NCBI RefSeq assembly: GCF_030144855.1
Contig: NC_082720.1
Location: 57,598,001-57,662,000, forward strand
Direction of reading: 5' to 3'
DNA length: 64,000 nt
From: Hypanus sabinus
Lineage: Eukaryota
Shown here: positions 5,305 through 59,205 of the stretch, piece after piece
Position numbering within the stretch: the first letter of the stretch is position 1
Layout of the letters: the number at the start of each line of letters is the position of its first letter
Position numbers and translations under genes: made by a program
The notes under the pieces: generated by a model
Told to the model about the DNA's origin: nothing
Seen by the model: only the letters and a program-made list of their open reading frames with translations
Database searches by the model: none

Positions 5305-5486
5305 TGTGCACCATTAAATGTATGCCCCAAATTAAACACTTCTTGCTTTAAGGAATGAGCTGAATTCTAATTGGTCAGATATGAATGCTATATTACCCAC
5401 CAATCAGAAGCTGAGTTGTGACTGGTGATCCGCACAGCCCCCTTCAATACACAGCCGCCATCGCTTAAGATCAGTCGCCGTGAAAA
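5305..5486 (+). promoter_or_regulatory. Conserved promoter cassette of gene 2
   Basis: TGTGCA 5305, TAAAT 5315, GCTTTAAG 5345, ATTGG 5370, CCAAT 5400, CTGGTGATCC 5422, then CCGCCAT..GATCAG..GTGAAAA. Confidence 0.85.
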
Positions 5487-5683
5487 CTGCCTTGCCAGCA
5501 GCACTGGAGGATTGGAACTCGGTTCTTTTCAAATTGGAACAATATAAGAACATTTCTAAGCTAACAGCAGAGGATATATCAAAAAGGTACGGATATTTTC
5601 TACGTCGCAGTTTCCCATTTAAATAAATCGCAGTTTCAGGGCATTGTCTCGGCTGGAAACCATTGGAATGATTTCTCCTGGAA

Positions 5684-8113
5684 ATGAGAGACAATATATA
5701 CTGGCTGCTGAAATACCAACTGTTTTTCTGCCTGTTCACCTGTTGGGATTTTGTTAGTGGCCAGATTCGATATTCTGTACCCGAGGAATTGCAACTGGGT
5801 GCCTTAGTTGGAAATATCGCAATCGATTTGGGGTTAAATTTAAAGCAGCTGACTGCTCGCAGTTTGCGGGTGGCGCCTAGTCCGATGAAGCGGTATGTTG
5901 ACGTTAATTTGGAGAATGGAATTCTATTTGTGAATGAAAGAATCGACAGGGAACAACTTTGCGGGCCGAACACCGAATGCTTTTTATCATTCGATGTTGT
6001 GCTTGAGAATCCCCTCGGTCTGCATCTGGTGGAAGTGGAGATTCTTGATATAAATGACAACTCTCCCAGTTTCCCTAAAAACCAGATCCGCTTGGAAATT
6101 TCAGAGATTATGGCACCGGGAGCGCGATTCCCCCTCGAGGCCGCGCACGATCCGGATATTGGAACTAATTCCGTAGAGGCATATCAGCTCCTTCCCAATG
6201 ATTATTTCTTTCTTGATTTACAAGTACACGGTGGTATAGGGAAGTTCCCAGTATTGGTGTTGCTAAGGGCATTGGACAGAGAAACGATATCGACCCATCA
6301 GTTAGTTCTAATTGCCGAAGACGGCGGAGATCCTGTGAGATCGAGCAGAGTCCAGGTAAAAATTACAGTGACGGATGCGAACGACAACTCTCCTGTTTTC
6401 TCGCAGTCGATTTATAAGGCCAAAATGTTAGAGTCGGTTCCCATAGGAACTCTAATTATTATGTTAAACGCCACAGATGTAGACGATGGCACGAATGGAG
6501 AGATAACGTACGCCCTTGGCAGCTATAATTCAGCTGACGTTCGCGAATTAGCTGCCGTGAATTCCAAAACTGGTGAAATCAGACTGAAAGAGCACTTGGA
6601 CTATGAACAAAGAAAAAGTTTTGTAATTAATATTCAAGCAGTTGATAATGGACATCCCGCAATGTCTGATCACTGTGATGTCCTGGTGGAGGTTATCGAT
6701 GTGAACGACAACGCTCCTGAATTGACGGTGACGTCGATCTCAAATGACGTGCCAGAAAACGCTACAGTGGGAACTACTATCGCACTGCTCCGTGCAGAGG
6801 ATAAGGATTCTGGGGAAAATGGACAAGTACAATGTCGAATTCCGAATGAGCTTCCCTTTAAGATGAATTCCTATATAAGTAACAATTGGAAATTGTTCGT
6901 AGACCATGCGCTGGATCGTGAAACTACCTCCAGATATGATATTACTGTGACTTGCACAGATGCAGGGGCCCCCTCTCTTACATCGAAGGAAACGATCCGT
7001 GTGGAAATTTCAGATGTAAATGATAATGCACCAAGATTTACGCAGTCTGTATACACGATAAATATAATGGAAAACAACATTATTGGAGATTCGATATTCT
7101 CCCTGACGGCTTTCGATCCAGACTCGGGGCAGAATTCCCTGTTGAAATTTACTATCCTGAATTCAGCTGGAGCTTTATATGTCTCCATCAACTCACAGAC
7201 TGGTGTTATCTTTGCTCAGAGATCTTTTGACTATGAGAAACTGAAAAGCTTCCAGATCCAAGTTCAGGTGCAGGACTCTGGAGTCCCAGCCCTCACCAGT
7301 AACGTTACAATTGATGTTGTTATCCTTGATCAGAACGATAATACCCCAGTGATCGTGCATCCTTTACCCGAGTATGGGTCAACTGTAATGGAGACAATGA
7401 GTAGGTTTGCTGAACCTGGATACCTCGTTGTCAAGGTCTCGGCTACTGACGCCGACGCTGGTCAGAATGCCCGTCTGTCTTACCACATTTTTCAGGCTAC
7501 CAATCGTGACCTGTTTACTATTTCAACAGACACAGGTGAAGTTTGGACTGTCCGGACTATTGAGAGCAAGGATGCTTCTAAACAAAGACTAATGATTGTC
7601 GTAAAAGATAACGGAACGCCCTCACTTTCAGCCGCAGTAACCATCTTAATATCCGTGACAGGAAGTGAAACGGTCTCCAGTGCCACCAGTTTAAGTAAAA
7701 ATCGCCAGTTCTCCCCTGACCTGAACTTTTATCTAGTTATAGCATTAGGAACGACATCTATAATTTTCCTTATAATTTTAATTATCCTTGCTATGAAAGT
7801 TTATAACAGAACTGGAATGGGATGCCAAAACAATATCGGTTGCTGTCTGGATACAAGAAACTTTCTTAATGGGACTCAGAAGGCCAGTAGAAGCCTTCAG
7901 ATACCACCGAACTATGTCGAGGTATTCGGAGGTGATCCACTTTCTCAGAGTTTCCGTTACGAGTCTTGTTCAACATTGCAGTCCATGAAGAGAGACTTCA
8001 CAGCTCCTCGTGGACCATCTACATCTATTCCCTACACCCACAAGAAACCCACTGGGAAAGAAAGCCCTGGGATGTTATATACTGAAGTCTACAGTTGCAA
8101 TACAAATAATGAG
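5684..8113 (+). CDS. Clustered protocadherin variable exon 2
   Basis: ORF 5684..8152; 6 EC + TM + cytoplasmic domain; donor GAG|GTGAGC at 8113/8114, phase 0. Confidence 0.95.
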
Positions 8114-9289
8114 GTGAGCTACTTCGCAAAAAAAAAAAAAATCCTTTTTTGAATTTGGGGCAATACGTTTAATGGTACGACGTTATTGCTTAGATCAATT
8201 TTTGTGCAGACTAATTTTAATCCAAATGCCTAATTTCCGTGTATTCTTTTTAATTGAATTGAACTTTGTAGGATTGTAAGTAATTCTTGACATTTTAACT
8301 ACCCTGATAAAAAGCTGCGAACAGGCAGTTGAACATCCTTGTTGTGAGTACTTCTGTTGAAAGCAAATGTTCTTCCCAGATGTCTTATGTCACTATATTT
8401 TAAAAGCCGGACGGGATCAGTAATGGGGACATGTAGATGTTGCAAAGCGGATATCACAAAAAATACTTATATACTGAAATTACAGCGTCATCTGTGCAGC
8501 TAGATTCAAGAGTGCACCTTTCTAATCCCTAAACTCAAAATGGAAATCAATGTAAGTTGATAAGTGTGTAAATGTATATATGCTTTCCCTCAGTTGGTGC
8601 TGCTTGACGAGATGGATAATTCAATGCACTTTGGGTTCTAATTTAGTCTCTAAATTATCCACTGTTTGGAAGCCTAGAGTTTCGTATTGGCCATTATGAA
8701 ACTCTCTATGTTGTTGGAGGTACTTGTCTAATCTAAGGAACGTGTTCTAACAGGATTCTGATTACCTTCTTCTTGTTGGTGAAAGTCTGTAGAAATCTCC
8801 CAAAACACATAAAAACCAAGTATACGGTCTCTCGTCACAGTCAATTTATGTATTTACCTAATTCAAATGCTTCTAATGCATAAAAAGGGATATCTTCATA
8901 GGGCATGGGATTTCGAGGCAATTACTTCCTTTTGCTCTTACAGTTCATTATTGGCTAGGTCAGGAGAGAATTTGGAGAATTATCACTGGGTTGTTCCACC
9001 GAATTCCACATGGAATGAATGAATATTTAAATTATTTTATATACTGCTAACCAGGATGAAATGTGTTGAATGTTCTGGGTTATGTTATAGTTGTATATTC
9101 CGGTAGTTGTAAAATATGCAATACTGATTTGTGGCTTCCATGTGGCAGCAGACTAGAAAAAAAGCCAGCTTCTGCTGTCCTTTCATAACAAAAGCACTTA
9201 TACTGCTAAATCAATATTTTTGATTAAAAAATATTTTTGAAGCACGTATTTTAAAACAATTGTGAAATGCGTGTGCTCGCGTGTAAAGC

Positions 9290-9748
9290 TGCCCCAACCA
9301 CTGAGCATATCTACATGAAGTGTTGCCATTGAAAAGCAGCATCAATCATCAAAGATCCTCGCCACGCAGGCCATGCTCTTTCATCGCTGCTGCTATCAGG
9401 TAGAAGATACAAGTGCCTCAGGACTCGCATTACTAGGTTACTACCCTTCCACCATCAGGCTTTTGAACAAAAAGTGATAACTACACTCATTCTATTTTTG
9501 GAGATCCCACAACCAATGCTCTCACTTTAAGGACTCTTTATCTTATTATTTTATGCTGTCTCATTTCATGTTATGTCATACTCGGAGTTTGTGCACCTTA
9601 TTTATATTTGCATTTACAAAGTTATTCTTCATTGACCTTAACTGTTGTTCTTAGCTCAGCTAAATATACCTGCAGGAAGAAGTATCTCAGGGTTGTATGT
9701 GGTGACATGCATGTATTCTGATATTAAATTTTACTTTGCACTTTGAAT
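9290..9748 (+). mobile_element. Rex1/Babar-like LINE 3' fragment
   Basis: Degenerate C-terminal ORF2 sequence (IIKDPRHAGHALSSLLLSGRRYKCLRTR) and 3' tail ending TAAATTTTACTTTGCACTTTGAA, similar to the tails at 18835-18955 and 27137. Confidence 0.65.
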
Positions 9749-10843
9749 AGGATGTGAATTCGAGGAGAAGGTGTTGCGGAGGGTGGACAATACCTAACAA
9801 TTCTGTTATATAGGAATGCTTCCAAAGTTAAAAGGCAAAGCAACAATATTGTGTGGAGCTTGGTCCATGTAGGCATGAACTGCTTACTTATCAAAGGAAG
9901 TCTGAATATAAAGTAACATCGTATGGTCAACAGCAAACTTCCCCACTCCTAGTACTTTGCTACTGCATAGCTTGGGAACTGTCCGAGATGTAAGCATCCT
10001 TATAAAATCCTAAGGAACTACTGTAGAGGTGCTCTGCTTTGCAGGATAGCAATCATGAACGATCAAATTATGATTCTTTGTGTATTTATGTGGGTGTCAC
10101 TGGTAAGGCCAGCGTTACCCAACACGCTTGGAAAAGTGATGAAAAGACACCAAGATGAAGCAATGTGGCTGATTGATCTCCCACAAAGTTACTGCATATG
10201 AAGTTCCAACTTTTAGGTTTACTATCAGTGAAACAATAGTGAAATATGAATCCTGGACAAAGTTGAACGTATAGCTGAAATGAAACCAGAAAGTGTTAAA
10301 AGTACTCCAAATTATATTCATTTTCCAGTCACTAGCGTAATATTCTACAAGTTAATATTACATTAGAATAGCTGTAGATCTCGACTAACATCAGGACAGC
10401 AGGGAGATTTAATGGCAGAGATTATTGCACTCTGGACTGTATTTTCAACACAGTTGATCACGTTAGCTGTTGTTTCAGGAATAAACCATAGAAAGATTTT
10501 ACATGCTGGTCTTTAAATTATGAAAAATTATGGATAACATCTAAGTTATTCAGTTATTTATCTTGGACACAGGGGATCGAAACATATTTCCCTTTAAAGA
10601 AACGTAATAGCATAACCTCATTCTTTTAAATATGATGGAGCAAATATACTCGGAATCTGAATGCTTATAATAATTATAATCAGCAAGACGAGCTAGTTTA
10701 CCCAGTTTTATTGCGATCCTGAAGGCTTTCTCTCGCAATAAATCTTTAAAATATTCAGTGTATCATTGTTCCTGAACCTACAAATCTGAAGATAAATTTT
10801 CACAAATACCTGAAATATAAATAATGCTGATTTTTATTTCAGT

Positions 10844-11034
10844 TGTGCAGTGATAAATACGTTAGAGTTCTTGCGCCAAATTTAGCACTTCTTGCTTTAA
10901 GAAATTAGCTGAATTTCAATTGGTCAGATATAAATGTTGTTGACTCCACCAATCAGAAGCCGAAATTTGACTGGTGATCCGACAGCCCCCTTCAATACGC
11001 AGACGCCATTGCTTAAGACCAGAAGCCGTGAAAA
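10844..11034 (+). promoter_or_regulatory. Conserved promoter cassette of gene 3
   Basis: TGTGCA 10844, GCTTTAAG 10894, ATTGG 10919, CCAAT 10949, CTGGTGATCC 10971. Confidence 0.85.
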
Positions 11035-11231
11035 CCGGATTGCAGGCAGCATCGGAGGATTTATACACGGTCGGTTTCCAATTGGAAGCAACGTGAAAAC
11101 ATTTCAATGAACACAACAGATTGCAAAAAAAGGTACATATATTTTCTGAATCGCATTTGTCTATTTTAAAACACTACGTTGTTAAACAGCATTGCGTCGT
11201 ATCGAGACCGTTGGAATGATTTCCCCTGGAA

Positions 11232-13661
11232 ATGAGATACAATATATACTGGCTGCTGAAATACCAACTGTTCTGCTCCTTGTTCAACTCCTGGGATTCT
11301 GTTTGTGGCCAGAATCGCTATTCTGTTCCCGAGGAATTACAACTGGGTGCCTTTGTTGGAAATATCGCAGTTGATTTGGGATTAGATTTAAAGCAGCTGT
11401 CTGCTCGTAGATTACGTGTGGCGTCAAGTCCGCGAAAGCGGTATGTTGACGTAAATTTAGAGAATGGGGTTTTATTTGTGAATGAAAAAATTGACCGGGA
11501 ACAACTTTGCGGAGCGAGCACCGAATGCGTTTTATCATTCAACGTTGTGATTGAAAATCCCATCAGCTTGCACCAGGTGGAAGTGGAGATTCTCGATGTA
11601 AATGATAATGCTCCCAGTTTCCCCAAAAGCCAGATCCGCCTAGAAATCTCAGAGATTATGGCACCGGGAGCGAGATTCCTCCTCGAGGCTGCGCATGATC
11701 CGGACATTGGAACGAACTCTTTACAAACTTACCAGCTACTTCCCAATGAATATTTCATTCTTGATGTTCAAGAGCACGATAGGGTAGGAAGGTTACCGGA
11801 GTTAGTGCTGCAGAGGGCCTTGGACAGAGAAACGATATCGGCTCATCACTTAACTCTAGTTGCTGAAGACGCCGGAATCCCGGTGAGATCGGGCACGGTC
11901 CAGGTAACAATCGCAGTGAAGGATGCGAATGACAACTCTCCTGTTTTCTCGCAATCGCTCTATCAGGTCAATATGTTGGAATCGGCCCCCATAGGAACTC
12001 TGATTATCACGTTAAACGCCACGGATTTGGACGATGGCCCGAATGGAGAGATAACGTATGCGCTCGGCAGCCGTAATTCAGCTGAGATTCGCGAATTAGT
12101 TAGCCTGAGTTCCAAAACAGGTGAAGTAAGTTTAAGAGGGTACTTAGACTATGAACAACGCAAAACCTTTGTTGTGAATGCAGAAGCAATCGATAATGGC
12201 CCTTACGCAGTTCCCCAGCACTGTGCTGTGGTGGTGGATGTTATTGACGTAAATGACAACGCTCCGGAGCTGTCGTTCACATCCATCTCAAATACCGTGG
12301 CAGAAGGTGCTCCAGTGGGGACTATTATTGCACTTCTCAGTGCAGAAGACAAGGATTCTGAGCAAAATGGGCAAGTAGAATGTCGAATTCCAAATAACTT
12401 ACCCTTTAAGTTAGATTCACCTGTGAAGAACAATTGGAAACTTCTTGTACAGCACGTGCTGGATCGCGAAACTACTTCTAGCTATGATATTACTGTGACC
12501 TGCACTGATGCAGGGAAGCCTCCCCTCGCATCCAAGAAAACAATACGTGTGGATGTATCAGATGTAAATGACAACGCACCAAGATTTACGCAATCGGTAT
12601 ACACGGCTAATATAATGGAAAACAACGTCATTGGGGATCCCATATTCTCCCTGACAGCTTTCGATGCAGACTCGGAACAGAATTCTTGCTTGACCTTTAC
12701 TGTCATGAATTCATCCGTAGCCTCTTATGTCTCCATCAACTCGCAGAGTGGTGTAATATTTGCCCAGAGATCGTTTGACTACGAGAAATTGAAAACTTTC
12801 CAGATACACGTCCGGGTGCAGGATTCTGGAACCCCACCCCTCGCCAGTAATGTTACAATTGATGTTTTCATCCTCGATCAGAACGATAATGCCCCGGTGA
12901 TCGTGCATCCTTTACCCGATTATGGATCTTCTATAATGGAGACAATAAGCAGGTTTGCTGAACCTGGTTACCTCGTGGTCAAAGTGTCAGCCACTGACGC
13001 CGATGCTGGTCAGAATGCTCGTCTGTCTTATCGTATTTTTCAGGCTACCCATCGCGATCTGTTCACTATTTCAGCAGAAACTGGGGAAGTTTGGACTATC
13101 AGGACTATTGAGAGCAAGGATGCTCCTAGGCAGAGACTTGTGATTGTCGTAAAAGATAACGGAATGCCTTCACTTTCAGCCACCGTAACCATAGTAATAT
13201 CAATGACAGGAAGTAAAACTATCTCGAAAGCTACCAGTTTGAGTAAAGCTCGAGAGCTCTCCCCTAAATTGAACCTTTACTTAGTCATAGCATTGGGAAC
13301 GACATCTATGATTTTCCTCATAATTTTAATTATCCTTTCTATTATAGTTCGTAATAACAGAAATGAAGTGGGATGCCAGTACAGTGCATGTTGCTGTTTG
13401 GAAACAAGAAACTTTCTAAATGGAACTCAGAAGGCCAGTAGAAGCCTTCAGATACCACCGAACTATGTCGAGGTATTCGGAGGTGATCCACTTTCTCAGA
13501 GTTTCCGTTACGAGTCGTGTTCAACTTTGCAATCCGTAAAGAGAGACTTAACGACACCGCATACGCGCGGTCCATCTGCACTTATGCACAATGCGCAGAT
13601 GCAACCCATTGGGAAAGAAATTTCAGGAATACTAGACTCTGAAATGTACAACTGCAGTGAG
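11232..13661 (+). CDS. Clustered protocadherin variable exon 3
   Basis: ORF 11232..13670; 6 EC + TM + cytoplasmic domain; donor GAG|GTGAGC at 13661/13662, phase 0. Confidence 0.95.
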
Positions 13662-14064
13662 GTGAGCTAGTTCGTAAAAGAAATCGTTTGGGAATACTGG
13701 GCCTTTGCCTTTACTGTGACTAATTGCTGTACATATCGAGGTCAAATTTTATTTATGCACAGTGATTTTCATATATATTATAATTTGCTACGTATTCATT
13801 TTAGTATAATTTTCAGGGTTTGTGCGATTCTTTACATTTCTGATACGTTGTTGCACCGTCCTGAAAGCACACAGGATTCCTTTATGACTTTGTACCGAAA
13901 CGAAATGTAATGAACTGCTTAGCAGGTGTTAAACGGGTCTTGTCTTAAACAGTTTATATGTTAATTGTTCCGCGAAGAACTACAGGTATAGCTAAACCCC
14001 CTTGTTGTGAGCACTGTGTTTGAAAGCAGCATTTCATCGCATTTTATTACGGCACCCTCCATCT

Positions 14065-14143
14065 CAGGAGTTCCTAACCTAGTGTTCATGGACCCTTCGG
14101 TTAATGGTAATAGTCCGTGGCATAAAAAGGTTGGGAACCCCTG
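14065..14143. mobile_element. Small MITE with hAT-like terminal inverted repeats
   Basis: CAGGAGTTCCTAACCT ... AGGTTGGGAACCCCTG termini, 79 bp; no clear TSD. Confidence 0.6.
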
Positions 14144-14303
14144 TTTTATTTCAAGCTCGATGGATGAAATGAATGTAAATGCAAGAAAGCGGAAAAACAA
14201 TAAAATCACACAGTACACTGAAAAAACGGAAACATCTACAGAGTGACGACCGAGAGTACTGCCAATGATCTTACTGTATGTCAGTCCTAAATGTGAGGGG
14301 TTC

Positions 14304-14438
14304 NNNNNNNNNNNNNNNNNNNNNNNNNNNNNNNNNNNNNNNNNNNNNNNNNNNNNNNNNNNNNNNNNNNNNNNNNNNNNNNNNNNNNNNNNNNNNNNNN
14401 NNNNNNNNNNNNNNNNNNNNNNNNNNNNNNNNNNNNNN
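14304..14438. other. Assembly gap (135 N)
   Basis: Run of N. Confidence 1.
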
Positions 14439-19372: not shown

Positions 19373-19575
19373 AATTGGCTGGTCAGCTGCCTCGTATGAT
19401 TTTATTGTGAGAATCCATTGGAAACTGAACAAAAGCTGAAGATGAGGACGAAATGAACTGTGCGATTTATGATCCGGCAGGAGAGTCGAATATCATGGTT
19501 TATAAAAATCTGAATAAAGGGACGAGTAATGGTGGCGTCAGGTACTAACAAACGTTGGAATGGTTTACACTGGAA

Positions 19576-48635: not shown

Positions 48636-51077
48636 ATGGAATTTTATAAATTATATTGGCTAATGAAATGGAAACTTTTATATTGTTTTATCCCTTCCTG
48701 GCAAGTAATTTCTGGACAGATACGTTATTCGATTCCTGAAGAATTGAATGTCGGCGCCTTTGTTGGGAATATCGCAGAGGACCTAAATTTGGATATAAAG
48801 GAACTTCCATCTCGCGGATTTCAAATTGTGCCAGGACCAAGTAAGCAGTATATAGATGTAAATTTAAACAGTGGGGTTTTAGTTGTGAAGGAAACAATGG
48901 ACAGAGAACTGTTGTGCGAGCAGAGCCTCGCCTGCACGTTATCTCTGGAAGCGGTGATTCAAAATCCTCTAAATATGTATCATTTTCAAGTGGACGTTAT
49001 GGACGTAAATGATAATGCCCCGAGTTTTCCTGAGAGTCGTTTTAAGTTGGAAATATCGGAGGTGGCTGCCCCAGAAACGCGGTTCGCTCTGAAGTGCGCA
49101 CAGGACCCGGACGTTGGATCGAACTCGGTACAAAGCTACCAGTTATTGGAGAACGGCTATTTCTCTCTCGATGTCGAGACGCGGGGTGGCAGCGAAAAAT
49201 TACCGGTCTTAGTCTTGGAAAGACAGCTGGACAGAGAAAAGGAAAGTACCCACAGGTTGGTGTTGATAGCTGCGGATGGAGGGGTTCCTGAGAGATCTGG
49301 CACTGCTGAGATATTGATCGTTGTTGAGGATGCCAATGACAACGCGCCTGTTTTCCCCAAGCCTCTATACAGAGTTAGTTTGCCAGAGAATGCACCCAAA
49401 GGAACATTAGTGATTAAATTAGATGCCACCGATTTGGATGCTGGAGTCAATGGGCAGATATTGTATTCGTTTAGCAGTCATACTTCAAATAGAGTTCGTG
49501 AAATGTTTGGGCTGGATTCCAAATCTGGCGAAATCAGAATTAAGAATAATTTGGACTACGAGGAAAATAGAGTATTTGAGATAAATGTCCAAGCAAAAGA
49601 TCAGGGTCCAAACGCAACTCCTGTATATTGTCACGTGGTGGTTAACATTGTTGATGAGAACGACAACGCTCCTATGATTACACTGACATCTTTATTCAGT
49701 CCTATCGGCGAAGATTCCCCACCGGGGACTGTGGTGGCTCTGATTAGTTCAACAGACAAGGATTCAGCTAAAAACGGGGATTTGGACTGCGAAATCCCAA
49801 AGGACCTTCCATTTAAACTAGTTTCCTCTTTACAAAAATATTATAAACTGGTTATCTGGGAGAGACTGGATCGTGAACATGTATCAGCCTACAATGTAAC
49901 TGTTGTGTGCACCGACGCTGGGGTTCCTCCTCTCACATCAAACAAAACGATCCTGGTGGAGGTCTCGGATATAAATGACAACCCACCCCAGTTTACACAG
50001 CCTGTATATACAGCTTATGTGATGGAGAATAACGCCATAGGTGCATCCATTTTCACTGTAACTGCTTTCGATCAAGATTTAAATAGGAACGCCGATGTGT
50101 CATACTTTATTTTGGAGAGTCAGATTCAGGGCATGTCAGTGTCTGCATATGTCTCGATTAACTCGCTGAGCGGTGTTATATTTTCGCAGAGAAGTTTCGA
50201 CTTCGAGAATCTCAAAAACTTTCAGATCCTGGTTCAGGCGCGGGATTCTGGTTCCCCACCACTTTCTGGAAATGCCTCAGTGGATGTAATTATCTTGGAT
50301 CAGAATGACAATGCCCCAGTAATCGTGCAACCTTTACCCGAATTTGGCTCCACTGTGTCAGAGACCATATCCAGGCTCGCAGAACCAGGTTACCTAGTTA
50401 CGAAGGTTTCTGCTACCGACGGTGACTCTGGCCAGAATGCTCGCCTTACCTACCAGATTCTCCAAGCTACTGAGGTCGGTCTCTTCACCATTTCACCGGA
50501 CACGGGAGAAATCTGGACAATACGCAGTATTAGTAAGAATGACGCTGTCAATCAAAGGCTGGTCATCTGCGTTAAGGACAATGGATCACCACCACTGACG
50601 GCCACAGTGACTATCATTCTGTCTTTAGTTGGAAATGATGGGCAACTGTTGTCGGAGCTGAACGGTTTGTCTGAGGATCCAGGGTTTGCTTCTGATACCA
50701 GCTTTTACCTCGTAATTGCTTTAGGGGTCACCTCCTCCGTGTTCCTGGTGATTTTGATTATTCTCGCCATAAAGGTTCATAGATCCTCTTCTCTTGGCGC
50801 ATGTGGTTGTTTTACAGTAAGAAACTCGTTACATGGATTTCAAAGAGGCAAAAGAACCCTCCAGATACCACCAAACTACGTTGAGGTATTTGGGGGTGAT
50901 CCACTTTCTCAGAGTTTCCGCTACGATTCATGCTCAAGTTCACATTCTGTGAAGAGGGATTTCAGGTTTTCCAGCAGCGGAGCTATGCGTAAGGATTTTA
51001 CTCCTGGTGGCATTCTGGGAAATGGCGATACTTTACAAACCTCCAAGTCTGCGCAGTACAGGAATACTTTAAATGAG
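48636..51077 (+). CDS. Clustered protocadherin variable exon 10
   Basis: Within ORF 48420..51146; ATG 48636; donor GAG|GTGAGG at 51077/51078, phase 0. Confidence 0.95.
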
Positions 51078-51910
51078 GTGAGGTTGTTATTCGATGGCGA
51101 GAACAACACCTCATGGGTCTGGATTGGATGTATAAATTTTTACTGAATATATGTTGATCATGAAGACTGGATTTGGGAAATATCTATAAATTAGTTATAT
51201 TTGCTTTCAATATGATCTGAATTTCCCGCCGCTATTTCAGGACCAGCGGCTCTGCTTATGAATCGTGTGCCTTTCAGTGCGTTTATGTTGTTTTATTATT
51301 TCATTGCATATTGAAATCAAAAAAACTTACCATTGAGGATATACGGTTAAAGGACAAAAGTCCTGGATTTATTGGTATCTATATTTTTGTTGAAGGAAAA
51401 TGCGAAATACTGTTCACTCTGCTTATTCGCTAGGTCCTGGGGCAGAGAAACTAATTGAGTATTATTGCTGCAGCCATGATACTGATGTCATGAGTTATGG
51501 TACTAGATTGATACTTATGTTCAGATTTTGTGTAATGATGTGTTTTACTCAGTTAACTAAAATCAACAGTCATTTGCTTATATAATTTCATGTTGTCATA
51601 GTACATAATTATATGACAGTATAATATAATTGTGATGCTTAATTATTTTAATAGTATTTGAATGCCCGATCCCTATTATATAACATTTTACTGCCATGTA
51701 ATGGGGATTAAGCTTTAAAATATGTAAAATAAAAATCGATCTGTTTTGAAAGTATGAAAACATGTACATCAATTTTAGATGCTTCCAAAACAGCAAAAAA
51801 TAGTCATTTTAATGGGTTTGAACGTAGTAGCTTTCAGAAAACACACCAAAAATTAGCAGTGGACATGAAATTTCCAAGCCACTGTATAAACTTATTTCAG
51901 AAATTTAGAT

Positions 51911-52086
51911 TGTACAATGATAAATATGACGGTGGGGTTACCAGAAGCATTATAGCTTTAAGAATGGTTCTGCGTGATGATTGGTTGAACGGCTGTTCAC
52001 CAATGAGAAGCTGAAATGTGCCTGGAGATCTGGACTGCCCACTTCTCTCCCAGCCACCATTATGCATGATAAGATACAGTGTAAAA
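51911..52086 (+). promoter_or_regulatory. Conserved promoter cassette of gene 11
   Basis: TGTACA 51911, TAAAT 51921, GCTTTAAG 51955, ATTGG 51980, CCAAT 52000, CTGGAGATC 52022. Confidence 0.85.
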
Positions 52087-52316
52087 CTCCGCATAGCGAG
52101 CCGCGTAGCGCTGGATTTGGGTTTTGTATTCGAAAGTGCTGGATATTTTAAATGAAATGGAATGGTTCGAGTGAAATCTCAATAACCTTTGAAAAATACA
52201 GGTACTTAATGCAACATTGCCTCTTTTGTCTGTAAAGCTGGCATTGTAGAATCTTATTCCAGAGAAGCGGTGAATGGCGTGTCGCGCTGAAGTCATTGCA
52301 ATGCTTTGTACAGGAG

Positions 52317-54725
52317 ATGGGATATTCTAATTTTTATTGGCTGTTTACATGGTCAATTTGTTATTGTATGTTATCATCCTGGGTTCTAGTTTCGGGACAA
52401 GTTCGCTATTCAGTTTCTGAGGAGCTGCAACTGGGTGCCTTTGTTGGGAATATCGCAGACGATTTGGATTTAGATGTGAATGAACTGACTGCTCGCAGTT
52501 TTCGGATTGTGTCTAGTCCCAGGAAGCAGTACCTCGATGTAAATTTGGACAGTGGAATCCTCTACGTAAAAGGGAAAATTGATAGGGAGCAGATCTGCGG
52601 GTCCAATTCTGCGTGCATATTGTTCCTAGAGGCCGTGATCGAAGATCCGCTGACTGTGTATCATTTTCAAGTAGAAATTCTGGATGTAAATGACAATGCC
52701 CCCAGTTTCCCGAAAGCACAATTCCGCTTGGAAATTTCAGAGGTTGCGGCGCAAGGAACGCGCTTTGCCCTCGAGTCTGCCTATGACCCAGATGTTGGAA
52801 TCAACTCGGTGCAGACGTACCAGCTGGGCGAAAACGAGCATTTCACCGTAGACATTCAGTCACGCCGCGGAGATGGCAAGCTACCGGTGTTAGTGCTGCA
52901 ACGGCTACTAGACAGGGAGAAACAAAAGATCCACAGATTAGTCCTGGTTGCGAAGGACGGAGGCATCCCTGAGAAATCCGGGACGGCTCAGATAATTGTC
53001 ACTGTCCAAGATGCGAACGATAATGCGCCGGTGTTTCAACAGTCGGAGTATAGGACAAGACTGTTTGAGAATACACCCAAAGGAACTCTGGTCATCAAAC
53101 TAAATGCTACTGATTTAGACGAAGGCTCCAATGGGGAGGTTGTGTACTCCTTCAGTAGCCACGCCTCCAACAGAGTCCGTGAGATGTTTAGTCTGGATTC
53201 CAGAACCGGCGAAATCAGAGTCAAAGATAATTTGGACTATGAGCAAAACGATATTTTTGAGATCAACGTCCAAGCGACGGACAAGGGATCTGTTGCAACG
53301 CCTGTGTATTGCGAAGTCTTGCTGGATGTTATTGACATTAATGACAATGCACCTGAGGCGACACTGACCTCTATATTCAGTCCTGTCAGTGAGGAGGCTT
53401 TGCCCGGGACAGTTGTCGCCCTGTTTAACGTGAATGACCAAGACTCTGGAGATAATGGGCAGGTACATTGCCAAATTTTAAGTGGTTCTCCTTTCAAACT
53501 GGATTCCTCTTTGAGGAATTATTACAGGATATTAACTGAGCAACGGCTGGATCGCGAAAACATCGCAAAGTATGATGTTACCATCGTGTGCAGTGATAAG
53601 GGATCTCCTCCTCTGACATCCAAGAAATCCATCCGGGTGGATATTTCCGATGTAAATGACAATGCTCCGCGCTTTATGCAGCCGTCATACACAGCCTATG
53701 TAACGGAGAACAATGTTATAGGATCTTCTATCTTCTCCGTTACTGCCACTGATGAGGATGTGAACCAGAATTCTCAATTGTCTTACTCCATCTTGGAAAC
53801 ACGGGACCAGGTTTTCCCAGTATCCGCTTACGTGAATATCAATTCAGAAACTGGGGTCATCTATGCTCAGAAATCATTTGACTACGAACAACTGAAAAGC
53901 TTCGAGATCTGTGTCCGAGCACAGGACTCTGGGCCTGTATCACTGAGTAGCAACGTTTCAGTAGATGTAATTATCCTCGATCAAAATGACAATGCTCCAG
54001 TCATCGTTCATCCACTACCAGAACATGGCTCGACAGTGACCGAGACAGTGTCGAGTTCCGCAGAGCCCGGCTACCTTGTCACCAAAGTATCCGCAATCGA
54101 CACAGATTCCGGCCAGAATGCTCGCCTGACTTATCAGATTTCCCAAGCTACAACCCCCGGACTTTTTACCATTTCTTCAGACTCAGGAGACATATGGACG
54201 ACGCGTGGCATCGTGGATAGAGATCTTAGGAAGCAACGTTTGCTCATCGTTGTGAAGGACAGCGGGGAGCCAGCACTTTCGGCCACGTTAACCATCATAA
54301 TCTCATTGGAACAGGGTTATTCGGAATCGTTATCCGAGGTGGATAGTTTATCCGAAGAAGCTGTTTTGGCCCCTGACGCGAGCTTTTATTTGGTCATGGC
54401 CTTGGGGTTACTGTCTGTGGTCTTCCTAATAATTGTAGTGGTGCTCGCCATTAAAGTTAACCAAAACCGATGGGGGTTTGACGATCGTAACTCTTGCTGT
54501 CGCAGGAGAAGTCGAAAGACGTGCAGGAGCATTCAAATACCCCCAAACTATGTGGAAGTGTTTGGGGGCGACCCACTCTCTCAGAGTTTCCGCTATGATA
54601 GTTGCTCTTCGTCACACACCACGAAGGGAGACTTCATGTTCCGCAACACGTGCAGCTCACTTGCAAGCAAGAATAACGAGACTCCGCCAATATCAAATTC
54701 CGAAAGTTGCAGAAACTTTATTCAG
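52317..54725 (+). CDS. Clustered protocadherin variable exon 11
   Basis: ORF 52296..54875; ATG 52317; donor CAG|GTGAGA at 54725/54726, phase 0. Confidence 0.95.
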
Positions 54726-55442
54726 GTGAGAAGCCTTTCCAAAGGAAACCGTTTGATTTACATACACGTCAAGATCGTAACTGGTGGAAAGGAAAAGCGG
54801 GATCCTCGTATGTTCTCTACTTTTCCTGATCATCGAGAAGCTCAATGTTTTCAGCACTTATCTGGCGCTCGGTAGATTTATAATTGCAGTTATTGTGCCG
54901 TATTAAATTACTGTAAGTCTTATAGATACAGCAAATTATGATGAAAAGAACAGTAGCATCCAAAATACCAATATGTTATGACTGTATAATGATAGATCAC
55001 TGTTCGGTGTTCTAACAAAAAAAAAACTTCCAAATATACAAGTGAAAAATCGCGGGAAACAGATAACAGGTTAGATGGCATCTGTGGAAACAAACTAAAT
55101 CAGATATGGCAAAGGTTCTTCGAGCTTCCGAGTTAAATCTGTTTCTCTTGCCGCATATGTTTCCTGGCCTGCTGTGTGTTTACAAAATTCAGTTTTTTTT
55201 TATTTTCACCATCTTCAGTTTTGTTGATTTTTCAAAAATATCTTCATAATGAATTAAATAAAAGGTCTTTTGCAGGTGTTATTGAATGAGTAGACGTTGC
55301 TCTGCCAACTTGGGCAATTAAGAATGACTGCCATTAGATGTGTCGTCATTTTGACGGCAAGTTCTGTTTTATCATATTGAAAACTTTTCTGAGAAAGAAA
55401 ATATGTACAATATTGATAGTAAGGAGAGTAAACATTTTTAAG

Positions 55443-55620
55443 TGTACAACTATAAATGCCACGATTACGCTGAGGTTTTCAAAGACGTTCTAGCTTTAAG
55501 CGATGCTTAGCCTAGTGATTGGTTGAATGCGAACATGCTCACGTTCACCAATCAGAAGGCAGATGTTGGCTGGAGATCTTTCCCTATCCACCATCGCGTA
55601 AGATCAGCTACAGTGTAAAA
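55443..55620 (+). promoter_or_regulatory. Conserved promoter cassette of gene 12
   Basis: TGTACA 55443, TAAAT 55453, GCTTTAAG 55493, ATTGG 55518, CCAAT 55548, CTGGAGATC 55570. Confidence 0.85.
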
Positions 55621-55840
55621 ATTGACAGCAGGCTGCGTAATGCTATATTAGGATCCGAGAATACTCCTTTGAAGGATTTTAAAAATAGGAACATCTGCGA
55701 TAGTTAATGTGTGGATTTTCAAATTGTACAGGTATTTCTTTACTAAAGCAATGTAAAATTGTATAGAAAGACATTTATTAAGGCGGTTTCGCGGACTGAG
55801 CAGGGCTGCGCCGAAGCATTTGAAATGATTTTCGCCGGAA

Positions 55841-58312
55841 ATGGGATATTGCAGAATATATTGCTTGAAAAAATGGTTTCTCCTTTACTGTCTATTCTTC
55901 TGGAGTCTAGTTTCGGGGCAAATTCGTTATTCGATTCCCGAGGAACTACAACTTGGCGCCTTTGTTGGTAACATCGCGGACGATTTGGGTTTAGATGTGA
56001 AAGAACTCACAGCTCGAAATTTTCGCATCGCGCCTGGTCTCGGGAAAAAATACTTGGATGTTAATTTAGACAATGGGATATTATTTGTGAAGGAAAAGAT
56101 TGACAGAGAGCAGCTTTGTGGATCGAGCCTTACTTGCCTTTTATCAATGGAAGCTGTAATCGAAAACCCTTTGAATGTCTATAGAGTTGAAGTGGAGGTT
56201 TTGGATATAAACGACAATGCTCCCATTTTTCCAAAGAATCAGGTCCGCTTAGAAATATATGAAGTGGCGACGCCGGGTGCCCGTTTCCCCCTCGAGTGTG
56301 CGTACGACTCGGACGTAGGGACAAACTCCTTACAAGACTACCGCCTGGTTGAGAATCAATACTTCGCACTTGACATTGAGACCCGCAGTGGGGAGGAGAA
56401 GCTGCCAGTGTTAACACTGGAGCGGGCGCTGGACAGAGAGAAAGAAGCAACCCACAGGTTACAACTAATTGCTAAGGACGGCGGGATTCCCCCAAGATCC
56501 AGCACTGCTGAAATATTAGTCACAGTACAGGATGCCAACGACAACTCTCCTGTATTCGCCCAGTCCGTCTACAGGGTCAGTCTGAATGAAAATGTGCCCA
56601 AAGGAACACTTGTAATCAAGCTTAATGCCACTGATTTGGATGACGGGTCTAATGGGGAGTTAGAGTATTCATTTACCAGCCATACCTCGGCGACAGTGCG
56701 TGAAATGTTTGATCTCAATTCAATAACAGGGGAGGTCAAAGTAAAGGGGATTTTGGACTATGAGGTAAATCGTGCCTTTGAAATCAATATTCAGGCAATG
56801 GACAAAGGTTTTGCTCCGCAACCTGCGTACTGCCGTGTTCACGTGGACATTACTGATTTGAATGATAACGCCCCTGAAGTTAAGGTAACGTCTTTGTTCA
56901 GTCCTCTTGCAGAGGACTCTTCCCTGGGGGTTGTGATAGCGCTGATTAGTACCACAGATAAAGACTCGGGAAAAAACGGAGAGATCCATTGTCAAATCCC
57001 AAATAATCTTCCATTTAAACTGGATTCGTCTTTAATAAACTATTACAAATTGCTGACTGTGGACCAATTGGATCGGGAAAATATCCCAAAGTATGACGTC
57101 ACTATAGAGTGTAGTGACTCAGGTTCGACTCCTCTCACCTCCGAGAAAACAATGCAGGTAGAGATCTCTGATGTAAATGACAACGCGCCTCGATTCAGCC
57201 AATCGTCCTACACAGCCTATGTGATGGAGAACAACGTCATCGGAGCCTCTATCCTATCAGTGACAGCTATCGATCCCGATTTAAAACAGAATGCTGAAGT
57301 ATCATATTCCATTACGCAGAACCAGCTTCGGGGTGAGTCAATAGCCAACTGCGTGTATATTAATTCGGAGAATGGAATCGTATTTTCTCAAAGAAGTTTC
57401 GACTACGAGGAACTCAAAGGCTTCCAGTTCCAGGTTCAAGCACGGGACAACGGAAGCCCGCCACTCACTAGCAATGTTTCGGTGGAGATTGTTATCTTGG
57501 ACCAGAACGATAATGCGCCAGTTATTGTTCATCCACTACCTGAACATGAGTCAACTGTCATGGAAACAATGTCTCGCTCTGCCGAGCCAGGTTACCTGGT
57601 TACCAAAGTGTCCGCCATCGATGCTGACTCGGGCCAAAATGCTCGCCTCTCTTACCAGATTGTCCAGTCTACTGACCCGGGACTTTTCACCATTTCACCG
57701 GACACGGGCGAAGTGTGGACCATCCGAGCCATGGAGGAGAAGGACGCGACAAAGCAAAAGTTAACCATCGTGGTAAAAGACAACGGGACACCGCCGCTTT
57801 CAGCTTCCCTGACCATCAGTTTGTCGGTGGTTGACGGGGATGCCCAGTTGCTCTCTGGGGTCACAGATTTGGACGAGAAGGCGGCTTTCAAGTCCGTATT
57901 GAGTTTTTACTTGGTGATATCTCTGGGGGCAATTTCATCCATTTTCCTGCTCATCTTAATCATCCTCGCTGTGAAGGTCCATAAAAGCAGGAGTGGATTT
58001 GGTGTTTACGGTTGGTACGGGGACATCTGCTGGTGTTATCAATCAGGACGCTCTCTCAATGGGATTCAGAAAGCTAGCAGAAACATTCAAATACCTCCGA
58101 ATTATGTAGAGGTATTCGGAGGTGATCCGCTTTCTCAAAGTTTTCGCTATGGAACCAATTCAACTATAGGTTCTACCAAGAGGGATTCCCCATTTCCCAA
58201 TACGCATAGCCTGACTGCAGTGACATATAAAAGCGGGGGGAGGCCTAATGAGAAATACAAATATCTGCAAACCCAAGCACCTGAACATTGTAGAAACTCT
58301 GTAAATAATGAG
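55841..58312 (+). CDS. Clustered protocadherin variable exon 12
   Basis: ORF 55841..58357; donor GAG|GTGAGG at 58312/58313, phase 0. Confidence 0.95.
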
Positions 58313-59017
58313 GTGAGGTATTCATCTAGAAAGGCAATAGATACCTCACAAGTATGATTTGTTTGCATTTATATGCAGTAATCCATATTATTGCAGTCCA
58401 TCTTGGTGGCATTATCTGCTCATCGAAACGAAGTTCCTTTTGGCATCTACAATCCATAACTGCAAAGCATTTTTTTCTGTGCGTTTAAGCTATCTAATTA
58501 TACTGTGGTCATTCTTCTTGAACGCGTAGGCGTTATTTATTGTCGATGTCGAAGGATGTTTCAGCCAATTTAAAATATGCCACATTTGGTTACAATGCGT
58601 AGTAGAAGAAAATGATTTTAGACTATATCAATGAATCGAAAGCAAATGTGAACTAATATGTAGCTATAAATACACACACGTTTTAGTGGCATTGTTTGAA
58701 GAATATAATGCATTTCAGGCTGTTCTGAATGTAAATTTAATCCTGGTGATAATGTTGTTTGTAACTGTATTTCTTCGTCATTTATGTTGATAATTCAAAG
58801 GTCAACGCGAGTATCAAAATTACCTGAAATAGACAGGTGGATGTTACATATTAAAGCAGTTCAGTTTGGAATTATCAAGAAAAGATCAAGTATTTTACAG
58901 TTAGTACATAAATAAATGGTCTTTAAGTGTTCCCTTTTGAAACTCTCTTGAAAACTATTTAAGTGAAATGTATAAACCTCTAAGCGAGTAACAATGGAGG
59001 CAGAATCAAATTTCCAT

Positions 59018-59205
59018 TGTGCAACTATAAATATTTGTTTTCGAAAGCAGAAACAGTGTTTCAGCTTTAAGAAATTGAGTCTTTGTGATTGGCTGAAAGC
59101 GAATGCGCCCTCACTCCCCAATCAGAAGCTGAATGGTGAATGGGGATCCTGACGGCCCCTTACGCCGCCTGTCCGCCATCACATCTGATCCGATGCAATA
59201 TGAAA
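59018..59205 (+). promoter_or_regulatory. Conserved promoter cassette of gene 13
   Basis: TGTGCA 59018, TAAAT 59028, GCTTTAAG 59064, ATTGG 59088, CCAAT 59118, TGGGGATCC 59141. Confidence 0.85.

What the first reader, a model, noticed from the sequence alone, without database searches (positions are those of the whole stretch)
5305..59205. Fixed-spacing promoter cassette with an inverted CCAAT pair in all 12 visible promoters and no clear CTCF/CGCT element
Seen: order is TGTRCA-N4-TAAAT, GCTTTAAG(AAA), ATTGG, CCAATCAG/CCAATGAG, CTGG(A/T/C)GATC, a C-rich tract, CCRCCAT..GATCAG..GTG(T)AAAA, about 200-420 bp before the ATG. Start-to-start spacing: GCTTTAAG to ATTGG is 24-25 bp in 12/12, CCAAT to the GATC box is 22 bp in 11/12 (23 in gene 4), and the bases between boxes diverge. 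Established: mammalian cPcdh promoter choice depends on a CGCT-containing CSE bound by CTCF with cohesin; CCAAT boxes bind NF-Y; CGCCAT is a YY1 core. By eye I see only half matches to CTCF (reverse AGGGGGC(A/T)G in genes 2, 3, 5; AGATGT..CTG before the GATC box). Inference: this lineage may use a different, possibly ancestral, NF-Y-centred promoter-choice grammar, with unknown factors reading GCTTTAAG and CTGGAGATCC.
Basis: partly seen in the sequence, partly recalled or inferred. Interest (0 to 1): 0.8.

Follow-up and report, generated by a model that had tools for sequence, protein, structure and literature searches.

The report
Stingray protocadherin promoters lacking CTCF box
Twelve neighbouring protocadherin genes of the Atlantic stingray share an old, tightly spaced promoter that keeps the frame of the classical vertebrate protocadherin promoter but has lost the CGCT element that recruits CTCF in mammals, so they could serve as a natural test of whether these genes can be chosen without CTCF.

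Summary
All 12 visible promoters of this nu-type clustered-protocadherin array (Hypanus sabinus) carry the same ordered boxes with near-invariant spacing. There are exactly 12 cassettes for 13 exons, and the assembly gap is intergenic. The same cassette and spacing occur in sawfish, bamboo shark and whale shark, while flanking intergenic DNA is unalignable, so it is under selection.

No promoter has a CTCF motif or a CGCT element at the homologous position.

Other protocadherin subclusters 0.2-1.6 Mb upstream in the same genome share the frame: GCTTTAAG, about 54 bp, CCAAT, 22 bp, GATCC. Just 5' of CCAAT they also carry an invariant CGCT element, AGACTCTTTGTGTCGCTGTCTA, which aligns significantly with tree-shrew Pcdh-gamma CSEs. 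So the CSE was probably ancestral and the nu array most likely lost it.

A further caveat: the canonical CTCF matrix finds sea-otter alpha CSEs but misses mammalian gamma CSEs. A negative scan therefore proves little on its own; the absence of the CSE block is the stronger evidence.

My reading is a CSE-less, probably NF-Y-driven (twin CCAAT, 28-30 bp apart) derivative of the known promoter. No binding or expression was tested. An adjacent window of this scan noted the same pattern.

The parts
5305..5490 (+). g1 promoter cassette: TGTGCACCATTAAAT 5305, GCTTTAAG 5345, ATTGG 5370, CCAATCAG 5400, TGGTGATC 5423, CCGCCAT 5455, then GATCAG and GTGAAAA. ATG at 5684.
   Evidence: DNA contigs of close relatives differ at 0.5-1.2% over 5250-5685, against 3.5-4.8% in intergenic DNA. 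The RNA-like run X1 starts between 5449 and 5508.
10844..11039 (+). g2 cassette: box 1 at 10844, GCTTTAAG 10894, ATTGG 10919, CCAATCAG 10949, TGGTGATC 10972, GACGCCAT. ATG at 11232.
19184..19373 (+). g3 cassette: box 1 at 19184, GCTTTAAG 19228, ATTCG (degenerate) 19253, CCAATCAG 19283, TGGAGATC 19307 (one base further than in the others). ATG at 19576.
22846..23040 (+). g4 cassette: GCTTTAAG 22897, ATTGG 22922, CCAATCAA 22950, TGGCGATC 22973, CCACCAT 23005. ATG at 23284.
30551..30731 (+). g5 cassette: GCTTTAAG 30597, ATTGG 30622, CCAATCAG 30641 (boxes only 19 bp apart), TGGAGATC 30664. ATG at 30952.
36044..36239 (+). g6 cassette: GCTTTAAG 36095, ATTGG 36120, CCAATGAG 36149, TGGAGATC 36172, CCGCCAT 36202. 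First in-frame ATG at 36457.
40066..40240 (+). g7 cassette: GCTTTAAG 40097, ATTGG 40121, CCAATGAG 40150, TGGAGATC 40173, CCGCCAT 40203. g6-g9 are recent duplicates.
44086..44260 (+). g8 cassette: GCTTTAAG 44117, ATTGG 44141, CCAATGAG 44170, TGGAGATC 44193, CCGCCAT 44223.
48217..48392 (+). g9 cassette: GCTTTAAG 48248, ATTGG 48273, CCAATGAG 48302, TGGAGATC 48325, CCGCCAT 48355.
51911..52090 (+). g10 cassette: GCTTTAAG 51955, ATTGG 51980, CCAATGAG 52000 (boxes 20 bp apart), TGGAGATC 52023, CCACCAT 52054. ATG at 52317.
55443..55638 (+). g11 cassette: TGTACAACTATAAAT 55443, GCTTTAAG 55493, ATTGG 55518, CCAATCAG 55548, TGGAGATC 55571, CCACCAT 55588 (the C-rich tract is shortened). ATG at 55841.
59018..59208 (+). 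g12 cassette: TGTGCAACTATAAAT 59018, GCTTTAAG 59064, ATTGG 59088, CCAATCAG 59118, TGGGGATC 59141, CCGCCAT 59173. ATG at 59376 or 59430.
36..61754 (+). Tandem array of 13 protocadherin variable exons (six cadherin repeats, a membrane-spanning part, a short tail), all on the + strand. The promoter of the first exon lies before the window.
   Evidence: The closest named elephant-shark protein is protocadherin nu17, at 58% identity.

Best explanation
The window holds the 3' part of the nu-type subcluster of the clustered protocadherin locus of Hypanus sabinus. Each variable exon has its own promoter, about 190 bp long.

**Origin.** This promoter is a subcluster-specific derivative of the ancestral jawed-vertebrate protocadherin promoter. 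It keeps the frame shared with the other stingray subclusters: GCTTTAAG, then CCAAT 53-55 bp later, then GAAATG..GATCC 22-27 bp later, then a C-rich tract. The 22-bp CSE core with the CGCT box, which sits immediately 5' of CCAAT in the other subclusters and in mammalian Pcdh-gamma promoters, has decayed to random sequence. A TAATGG/TTATTG element further 5' has become a perfect inverted CCAAT.

**How it works (inferred).**
- NF-Y binds the proximal CCAATCAG/CCAATGAG box, and in most genes a second, inverted box 28-30 bp upstream.
- This fixes transcription start about 50-100 bp downstream, near the CCGCCAT (YY1-like) / GATCAG / GTGAAAA boxes.
- Unknown factors read GCTTTAAGAA, ATGTGAC-TGGNGATCC and the palindromic TTGTRCAA-N-TAAAT element.
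- CTCF is probably not recruited to these promoters through a CSE.

**Shown:** the sequence architecture, its spacing, its conservation across sharks and rays, and the absence of a CSE or CTCF motif. **Inferred:** the identity of the factors, the start site and the consequences for gene choice.
For: **Architecture and spacing.**

**Conservation.**
- The same cassette is found in sawfish (4 promoters), bamboo shark (2) and whale shark (2).
- Over 34 nu-type promoters, GCTTTAAG to ATTGG is 24-25 bp in 30/30 and CCAAT to GATC is 27 bp in 30/32.
- Stingray-to-shark cassette alignments give z = 26-39. Within the window the mean z is 19, against 0.36 for neighbouring intergenic DNA.
- Close relatives' DNA differs less in the promoter (0.5-1.2%) than in intergenic DNA (3.5-4.8%).

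**Shared frame and CSE in sister subclusters.**
- Searches show the frame. The consensus AGACTCTTTGTGTCGCTGTCTA-CCAAT has its core invariant in 22/22.
- It aligns with tree-shrew gamma promoters over 54-58 nt at about 75% identity, z = 7-13, with 0/300 shuffles reaching the score.
- Window promoters give z = -0.9 to 3.0 against the same gamma promoters (other species' nu promoters reach 4.2).
- The CSE core is matched at 3-10 of 18 positions in the window, against a null of 4.6.

**CTCF.**
- There are no promoter hits. The best score per promoter equals that of shuffles, 2.09 against 2.09 bits.
- The matrix is validated on sea-otter Pcdh-alpha: CSE at -208 scores 13.8 bits and the exonic site at +453 scores 15.6 bits, both forward.
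- The core consensus occurs 655 times in this genome against 12 for the reversed control.

**NF-Y.**
- CCAATCAG/CCAATGAG in 11/12, and paired boxes 28-30 bp apart in 10/12.
- Double CCAAT boxes 24-30 bp apart are typical of NF-Y-bound regions, NF-Y peaks overlap YY1, and their overlap with CTCF/cohesin is significantly low (PMC4889920).

**Start site.** The RNA-like run X1 covers 5449-8234 but neither the boxes upstream nor intergenic DNA.
Against: - No binding, chromatin or start-site data exist for any of this.
It also fails on mammalian gamma CSEs (-5.7 to 4.4 bits), which the literature treats as CTCF sites. CTCF sites of unusual sequence would therefore be missed.
- Five of the 13 exons have CTCF-like sites of 13-16 bits, 2 forward and 3 reverse, against 0.8 expected.
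- The direction of change (loss, not 'never had') rests on parsimony and on intermediate promoters that carry both ATTGG and the CSE. The relic similarity in nu promoters is weak: 6.1 of 18 positions against 4.6.
- X1 is only guessed to be RNA, comes from another species or from paralogues, and contigs cannot show a true 5' end.
- A TATAAAT-like box 45 bp before GCTTTAAG could mark a start site further upstream.
- In g5 and g10 the two CCAAT boxes are 19-20 bp apart. From memory, that is too close for two NF-Y trimers.
- No elephant-shark DNA could be obtained.
Confidence: 0.7

Rival explanations
1. One reading: cartilaginous fishes as a lineage use an ancestral, NF-Y-centred promoter-choice grammar without a CSE or CTCF, and the mammalian CSE/CTCF system came later.
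For: No canonical CTCF motif was found in any of 55 protocadherin promoters sampled across the 2.4-Mb cluster. A perfect CCAAT box is the most widespread element of these promoters, whereas four tree-shrew gamma promoters have only CCAAA, CCAAC or CTAA at that place.
Against: In this genome, 22 promoters carry an invariant CGCT element in the same frame, and it aligns with mammalian gamma CSEs at z = 7-13. A CGCT element is reported for the elephant-shark cluster (PMC2926608). The canonical matrix also misses mammalian gamma CSEs, so 'no motif' in the other subclusters does not mean 'no CTCF'.
Confidence: 0.12
2. The nu genes still use CTCF, through exonic or non-canonical sites in place of a promoter CSE, much as the mammalian alpha cluster has an exonic site.
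For: A forward site, TCTGCACCAGGTGGAAGTG, scores 13.4-13.7 bits at ATG+336 in the first and third exons of the window (377-395 and 11567-11585) and in 7 of 9 genes of that subfamily. The identical 19-mer occurs in two sawfish genes. Its score equals that of a genuine sea-otter alpha CSE, 13.8 bits. It lies about 620 bp after CCAAT, and the mammalian exonic site lies about 700 bp after the CSE.
Against: Only 2 of the 13 exons in the window have the forward site. Three others have reverse sites, and eight have none at 13 bits or more. The motif falls in codons for a conserved cadherin segment (LHQVEV), so protein constraint can explain it. It is confined to one subfamily.
Confidence: 0.12
3. The boxes are not promoter elements but part of the transcribed leader. 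Transcription would start at the TATA-like TAAAT box or at GCTTTAAG, and the conserved blocks would act in the RNA or as downstream elements.
For: TATAAAT, GATAAAT or TTTAAAT lies 31-51 bp before GCTTTAAG in all 12 promoters, and no start site has been mapped.
Against: The RNA-like contigs give no depth over 5250-5448 but do cover 5449 onwards. The elements are classical DNA motifs in both orientations: an inverted CCAAT pair and a palindromic TTGTRCAA. The homologous region in mammals is the promoter CSE.
Confidence: 0.06
4. The similarity only reflects recent duplication or gene conversion among paralogues and carries no function.
For: g6-g9 are near-identical recent duplicates.
Against: Paralogues with only 53-57% protein identity, and species separated since the shark-ray split, keep the boxes and spacing, while DNA 500 bp upstream is unalignable.
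Confidence: 0.02

Closest known systems
Mammalian clustered-protocadherin promoter with the conserved sequence element (CSE, CGCT box), a forward CTCF site
   Same: One promoter per variable exon, 200-400 bp before the ATG. The frame downstream of the CSE is shared: a CCAA(T)-like element, GAAATG..GAGATCC and GACTGCYCC..TTCC can be seen in tree-shrew gamma promoters, in stingray sister subclusters and in nu promoters. A YY1 site lies just 3' of the human alpha6 CSE (PMC3333863), and CCGCCAT lies 53-55 bp after CCAAT here.
   Different: The 22-bp CSE core and its CGCT box are absent from all 12 promoters. There is no CTCF-matrix hit. CCAAT is perfect here but degenerate in four tree-shrew gamma promoters. 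GCTTTAAG and the inverted CCAAT were not seen in the mammalian promoters examined.
Other protocadherin subclusters of the same stingray genome (C33, 56.0-57.43 Mb)
   Same: GCTTTAAG lies 53-55 bp before CCAAT, GATCC lies 26-27 bp after it, a C-rich tract follows, and there is often the same TGYRCA..TAAAT element.
   Different: They carry AGACTCTTTGTGTCGCTGTCTA directly before CCAAT. Most have TTATTGA, TAATGG or TTATGGG where the nu promoters have ATTGG. Three of the four promoters at 57.36-57.42 Mb have both ATTGG and the CSE, so they look like an intermediate form.
CSE-less or CGCT-less protocadherin promoters in other vertebrates: Xenopus gamma2 15-36, Xenopus and zebrafish alpha, mammalian alpha-c2, beta1, gamma-c4 and gamma-c5
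   Same: These are precedents for whole runs of cluster genes whose promoters lack the CGCT box or the whole CSE and carry another conserved motif about 200 bp before the ATG (PMC4978886; PMC7811963).
   Different: They belong to different subclusters and lineages. Those motifs are not given as text in the papers I could read, so no sequence comparison was possible. Whether nu genes behave like the constitutively expressed C-type genes is unknown.
NF-Y promoters with double CCAAT boxes
   Same: CCAAT pentamers with the favoured CAG/GAG 3' flank, two boxes 28-30 bp apart in 10/12 promoters, and a YY1-like site nearby. Spacings of 24-30 bp dominate NF-Y-bound double boxes (PMC4889920).
   Different: The start site is not mapped, so the usual -60 to -100 position is unverified. 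In two genes the boxes are 19-20 bp apart. The pair is inverted, and binding is untested.

Membership tests
Clustered protocadherin variable-exon promoter | One conserved promoter a few hundred bp upstream of each large variable exon of a tandem array | tested here: met
   12 cassettes lie 312-388 bp (GCTTTAAG to ATG) before 12 of the 13 cadherin exons, and there are none elsewhere in the window.
CSE-type (CTCF-bound) protocadherin promoter | Conserved sequence element with a CGCT box | tested here: not met
   At the homologous position, the 22 nt before CCAAT, the window promoters match the stingray CSE core at 3-10 of 18 positions, against a null of 4.6, and none has CGCT there. The one CGCT in g1 (5462) lies inside the CCGCCATCGCT box, 62 bp downstream of CCAAT.
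CSE-type (CTCF-bound) protocadherin promoter | Forward CTCF motif in the promoter | tested here: not met
   No hit of 8 bits or more, and best scores equal those of shuffles. The matrix was recalled from memory but validated on sea-otter alpha CSEs. It misses mammalian gamma CSEs, so this test alone is weak.
CSE-type (CTCF-bound) protocadherin promoter | CTCF/cohesin occupancy and dependence of expression on it | not testable with these tools
   This needs ChIP or CUT&Tag, or a knock-down, in elasmobranch neurons.
NF-Y (CCAAT-box) promoter | CCAAT pentamer with favourable flanks | tested here: met
   Proximal box: CCAATCAG in 6, CCAATGAG in 5, CCAATCAA in 1. Distal inverted box: ATTGG in 11/12, and read on the other strand it is RRCCAATCA in most. 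The flank preferences are from my own knowledge.
NF-Y (CCAAT-box) promoter | Box about 60-100 bp upstream of the transcription start | tested here: inconclusive
   The RNA-like contigs begin 50-110 bp after the g1 CCAAT, but contigs cannot show a true start and the run is only guessed to be RNA.
NF-Y (CCAAT-box) promoter | NF-Y binding | not testable with these tools
   No ChIP or gel-shift data.
Protocadherin nu subcluster of cartilaginous fishes | Variable exons closest to elephant-shark nu genes, at the 3' end of the cluster | tested here: inconclusive
   The best named elephant-shark hit is protocadherin nu17 at 58% identity. The array is the 3'-most of the exons found on C33. Constant exons and a tree were not examined.

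The most novel reading that the evidence does not exclude
An array of about 26 alternative protocadherin genes, conserved across elasmobranchs, is chosen and expressed in neurons without any CSE or CTCF anchor at its promoters. It would use a twin-CCAAT/NF-Y platform plus unknown factors reading GCTTTAAGAA and ATGTGAC-TGGNGATCC. Sister subclusters in the same locus keep the mammalian-type CSE, so the locus would offer a natural side-by-side comparison of CTCF-dependent and CTCF-independent isoform choice.
Probability: 0.25. Interest if true: 0.7.

Novelty: new variant of a known kind. Interest (0 to 1): 0.45.

Why it matters
In mammals, each neuron's protocadherin identity is thought to depend on CTCF and cohesin looping between an enhancer and a CSE-bearing promoter. 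This stingray locus offers two things to that question.

First, the promoter frame around the CSE is very old. A stingray CSE aligns with a tree-shrew gamma CSE over more than 50 nt. In elasmobranchs it is joined to a perfect CCAAT box.

Second, one whole subcluster has erased the CSE and kept everything else under selection for roughly the age of the shark-ray split. That is close to a natural CSE deletion across about 26 genes.

Single-cell expression and CTCF/NF-Y profiling in skate or catshark brain could therefore show whether stochastic choice needs the CSE. It could also name the factors that read the other conserved boxes, some of which are still visible in mammalian gamma promoters.

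The claim should be kept modest. Precedents for CSE-less subsets exist in frog, zebrafish and the mammalian C-type genes, and nothing functional has been measured.

Tried and rejected
- **Elephant-shark paper and classic CSE papers.** I could not read Yu et al. 2008 or Wu 2001, Noonan 2004, Guo 2012, Kehayova 2011 and Wu 2005. What the elephant-shark paper says about nu promoters is therefore unknown to me.
- **Supplement with CSE oligonucleotides.** Not held.
- **Fugu paper.** No promoter motif text.
- **Literature searches.** Searches for CCAAT or NF-Y in protocadherin promoters and for CTCF in shark protocadherins found nothing relevant.
- **Other species' DNA.** Elephant-shark DNA was not on record, and the great white shark file was too large.
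- **Transcription start and 5'UTR splicing.** These could not be resolved. Only contigs were available, the RNA-like run is a guess, and the one 'joint' (5441 to 5656) is present in DNA runs, so it reflects paralogues and not splicing.
- **Reverse AGGGGGC half matches as CTCF sites.** Rejected: 0.5-8 bits, within the shuffle range.
- **Relic CSE in the window promoters.** Rejected as a firm claim: 3-10 of 18 matches against a null of 4.6. Only promoters outside the window and the sawfish ones reach 11-13 of 22.
- **Relation of nu genes to mammalian C-type isoforms.** Considered and left untested. No C-type sequences were in hand, and identities to bony-vertebrate proteins are a flat 39-48%.
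- **Guesses for the other boxes.** A C/EBP- or PAR-bZIP-like palindrome, a POU-like GCA-N3-TAAAT, and a MAZ/Sp-like C-rich tract come from memory only and were not tested.


Full report
**What is in the window**

The window is G000:C33:57598001-57662000. It holds 13 large open reading frames on the + strand, each with six cadherin repeats and the protocadherin cytoplasmic domain. tblastn with the second one finds exactly these 13 and no fragments.

The nearest named elephant-shark protein is protocadherin nu17 at 58% identity. At least 54 related exons lie on the same contig between 55.23 and 57.66 Mb (55 matches in all, one on another contig), and the window is the 3' end of that series. According to the literature, nu, mu and epsilon subclusters are peculiar to cartilaginous fishes (PMC2764143).

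**The assembly gap**

The N run at 14304-14438 lies about 630 bp after the end of exon 2 and 4.7 kb before the next cassette. It touches no box and no exon, and no protocadherin fragment lies beside it. I did not try to fill it.

- GCTTTAAG occurs 12 times, all on the + strand, against 2.25 expected.
- A combined CCAAT..TGGNGATC pattern occurs exactly 12 times, all on the + strand and always before an exon.
- The order is TGYRCA-N4-WAAAW, GCTTTAAG, ATTGG, CCAAT(C/G)AG, TGGNGATC, a C-rich tract, CCRCCAT, GATCAG, GTGAAAA.
- GCTTTAAG to ATT(G/C)G is 24-25 bp in 12/12.
- ATTGG to CCAAT is 28-30 bp in ten genes and 19-20 bp in g5 and g10.

Four small corrections apply. ATTGG is ATTCG in g3. g4 has CCAATCAA. 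The stretch between CCAAT and the GATC box is itself conserved (CAGAAGCTGA.ATGTGAC). The 3' boxes are less regular.

**It is constrained, not just young**

- Cassette pieces of eight non-redundant genes (protein identity to g1 as low as 53-57%) align with mean z = 19. Pieces 490-700 bp further upstream give z = 0.36.
- I fetched orthologous loci from sawfish, bamboo shark and whale shark. All eight promoters there carry the same boxes in the same order.
- Over 34 nu-type promoters of four species, GCTTTAAG to ATTGG is 24-25 bp in 30/30 and CCAAT to GATC is 27 bp in 30/32.
- Stingray-to-shark cassette alignments give z = 26-39.
- DNA contigs of very close relatives differ at 0.5-1.2% in the g1 promoter, at 1.3-2.3% in exon pieces and at 3.5-4.8% in intergenic pieces.
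- Genome-wide, a loose version of the cassette occurs 26 times, 21 of them in this cluster, against 1 for the reversed control.

**CTCF**

I used the JASPAR-type CTCF matrix as I remember it, so I tested it first.

- Its core consensus occurs 655 times in this genome, against 12 for the reversed pattern.
- In a sea-otter Pcdh-alpha locus it finds forward sites at -208 (13.8 bits, the CSE) and +453 (15.6 bits, the exonic site), and the equivalent sites of the neighbouring genes.
- In the window no hit of 8 bits or more falls in a promoter.
- Across 55 promoters of the cluster, the best score in the last 500 bp before the exon match averages 2.09 bits, the same as shuffles.

There is an important limit. 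Six tree-shrew Pcdh-gamma CSEs score only -5.7 to 4.4 bits, although the CSEs of all three mammalian clusters are reported to bind CTCF (PMC7811963 and PMC6881428; gel shift with a gamma-a2 probe in PMC3333863). A negative matrix scan therefore cannot exclude CTCF at CSE-type elements. What counts is whether the CSE itself is present.

**The CSE is present next door**

Anchoring all stingray promoters on CCAAT shows a common frame. GCTTTAAG lies 53-55 bp upstream, GATCC lies 26-27 bp downstream, and a C-rich tract follows.

In 22 promoters between 56.0 and 57.43 Mb, the 22 nt before CCAAT read AGACTCTTTGTGTCGCTGTCTA. The run TG.CGCT and the T two bases after it are invariant in 22/22. This block, with its flanks, aligns with tree-shrew gamma promoters (GGTGCA.T...AAGGACTCTGAGCGYCGCTGTT.ACCAA....GAAATG......GAGATCC) over 54-58 nt at about 75% identity. 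That gives z = 7-13, with 0/300 shuffles reaching the score.

So the stingray has the classical CSE, fused to a perfect CCAAT box. This agrees with the published statement that a CGCT element exists in the elephant-shark cluster (PMC2926608).

**The nu promoters lack it**

- Against the same tree-shrew promoters, the window's promoters give z = -0.9 to 3.0.
- At the fixed register they match the 18-nt CSE core at 3-10 positions, against a null of 4.6 with sd 1.8.
- The interval also varies in length.
- Some nu promoters outside the window and in other species keep more: 11-13 of 22, for example sawfish TGTTACGTTGTCTA-CCAAT.
- Three of the four promoters at 57.36-57.42 Mb have both ATTGG and the CSE.

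Loss of the CSE in the nu lineage is therefore the more parsimonious reading, and I give it about 0.65-0.7. It is not proven. The element that is ATTGG in nu promoters corresponds to TAATGG, TTATGGG or TTATTGA in the others.

**How it probably works**

The proximal box is CCAATCAG or CCAATGAG in 11/12. The distal box, read on the other strand, is RRCCAATCA in most genes. The two are 28-30 bp apart in 10/12.

In human ChIP-seq data, nearly half of NF-Y-bound regions have two CCAAT boxes, with preferred spacings of 24-27, 26-30 and 36 bp. NF-Y peaks overlap YY1 peaks, and their overlap with CTCF/cohesin is significantly low (PMC4889920). CCGCCAT or CGCCAT, a YY1-type core, lies 53-55 bp after CCAAT in six or seven genes. 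A YY1 site also sits just 3' of the human alpha6 CSE.

The RNA-like run X1 covers 5449-8234 of g1 and nothing upstream or intergenic. This fits a start 50-100 bp after CCAAT, but the evidence is weak.

The factors for GCTTTAAGAA, ATGTGAC-TGGNGATCC and the palindromic TTGTRCAA-N-TAAAT element are unknown. My guesses (a bZIP- or POU-like factor, a MAZ/Sp-like factor for the C-rich tract) come from memory and were not tested.

**Comparison and novelty**

CSE-less or CGCT-less promoter sets are already known. Xenopus gamma2 15-36 has its own 13-bp motif. Xenopus and zebrafish alpha lack the CGCT box (PMC4978886). Mammalian alpha-c2, beta1, gamma-c4 and gamma-c5 lack the CSE.

The present case is a new variant of that kind: a large, anciently conserved elasmobranch array that has kept the promoter frame and lost the CSE. 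I found no paper that describes it, but I could not read the elephant-shark paper. An earlier first-stage note on the adjacent window reports the same pattern. My scans of that stretch agree with it.

**Verdict**

Interest is moderate. The value lies in the natural CSE-plus versus CSE-minus contrast within one locus, and in the deep conservation of the promoter frame. No function has been demonstrated.

Noticed in passing
window 377-395 and 11567-11585 (+); also L058:3570 and L058:22062: A forward CTCF-like 19-mer, TCTGCACCAGGTGGAAGTG (13.4-13.7 bits), lies 336 bp after the ATG in 7 of 9 genes of one nu subfamily and is identical in two sawfish genes. It scores like a real sea-otter alpha CSE, but it lies in codons for a conserved cadherin segment (LHQVEV). 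Reverse-strand sites of 13-16 bits lie in three other exons (6125, 24274, 31396).
   Followed up: partly
L031-L056 (G000:C33 56.0-57.43 Mb), L061: Stingray protocadherin promoters outside the window carry an invariant CGCT element fused to CCAAT. It aligns with tree-shrew Pcdh-gamma CSE promoters over more than 50 nt, including an upstream GGTGCA.T element and a downstream GAAATG..GAGATCC. These mammalian gamma CSEs score below 5 bits with the canonical CTCF matrix.
   Followed up: partly
window, 16-25 nt before each ATG (e.g. 5659-5683): A conserved CATTGGAATGNTTT...GGAA motif sits directly before the start codon.
   Followed up: no
window 5585, 11131, 19540, 30871, 52200, 55730, 59307; L057 about 9895: An AGGTA/AGGTR splice-donor-like motif lies about 35-115 bp before the ATG in seven of the twelve genes and in a bamboo-shark promoter. 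A short 5'UTR intron is possible. The RNA-like contigs showed no joint there.
   Followed up: no
window 9230-9826: A very high-copy repeat lies in the g1-g2 intergenic region. Summed contig depth is about 100,000 in three DNA runs, against 10-20 for the flanks, with many loose ends.
   Followed up: no
L061 (tree shrew), e.g. 13078, 16939, 29530: A dozen near-identical strong CTCF motifs, GGGCCAGCAGGTGGCATGG (13-20 bits), are scattered between the gamma exons on both strands. They look like a repeat family carrying CTCF sites and are not at the promoters.
   Followed up: no
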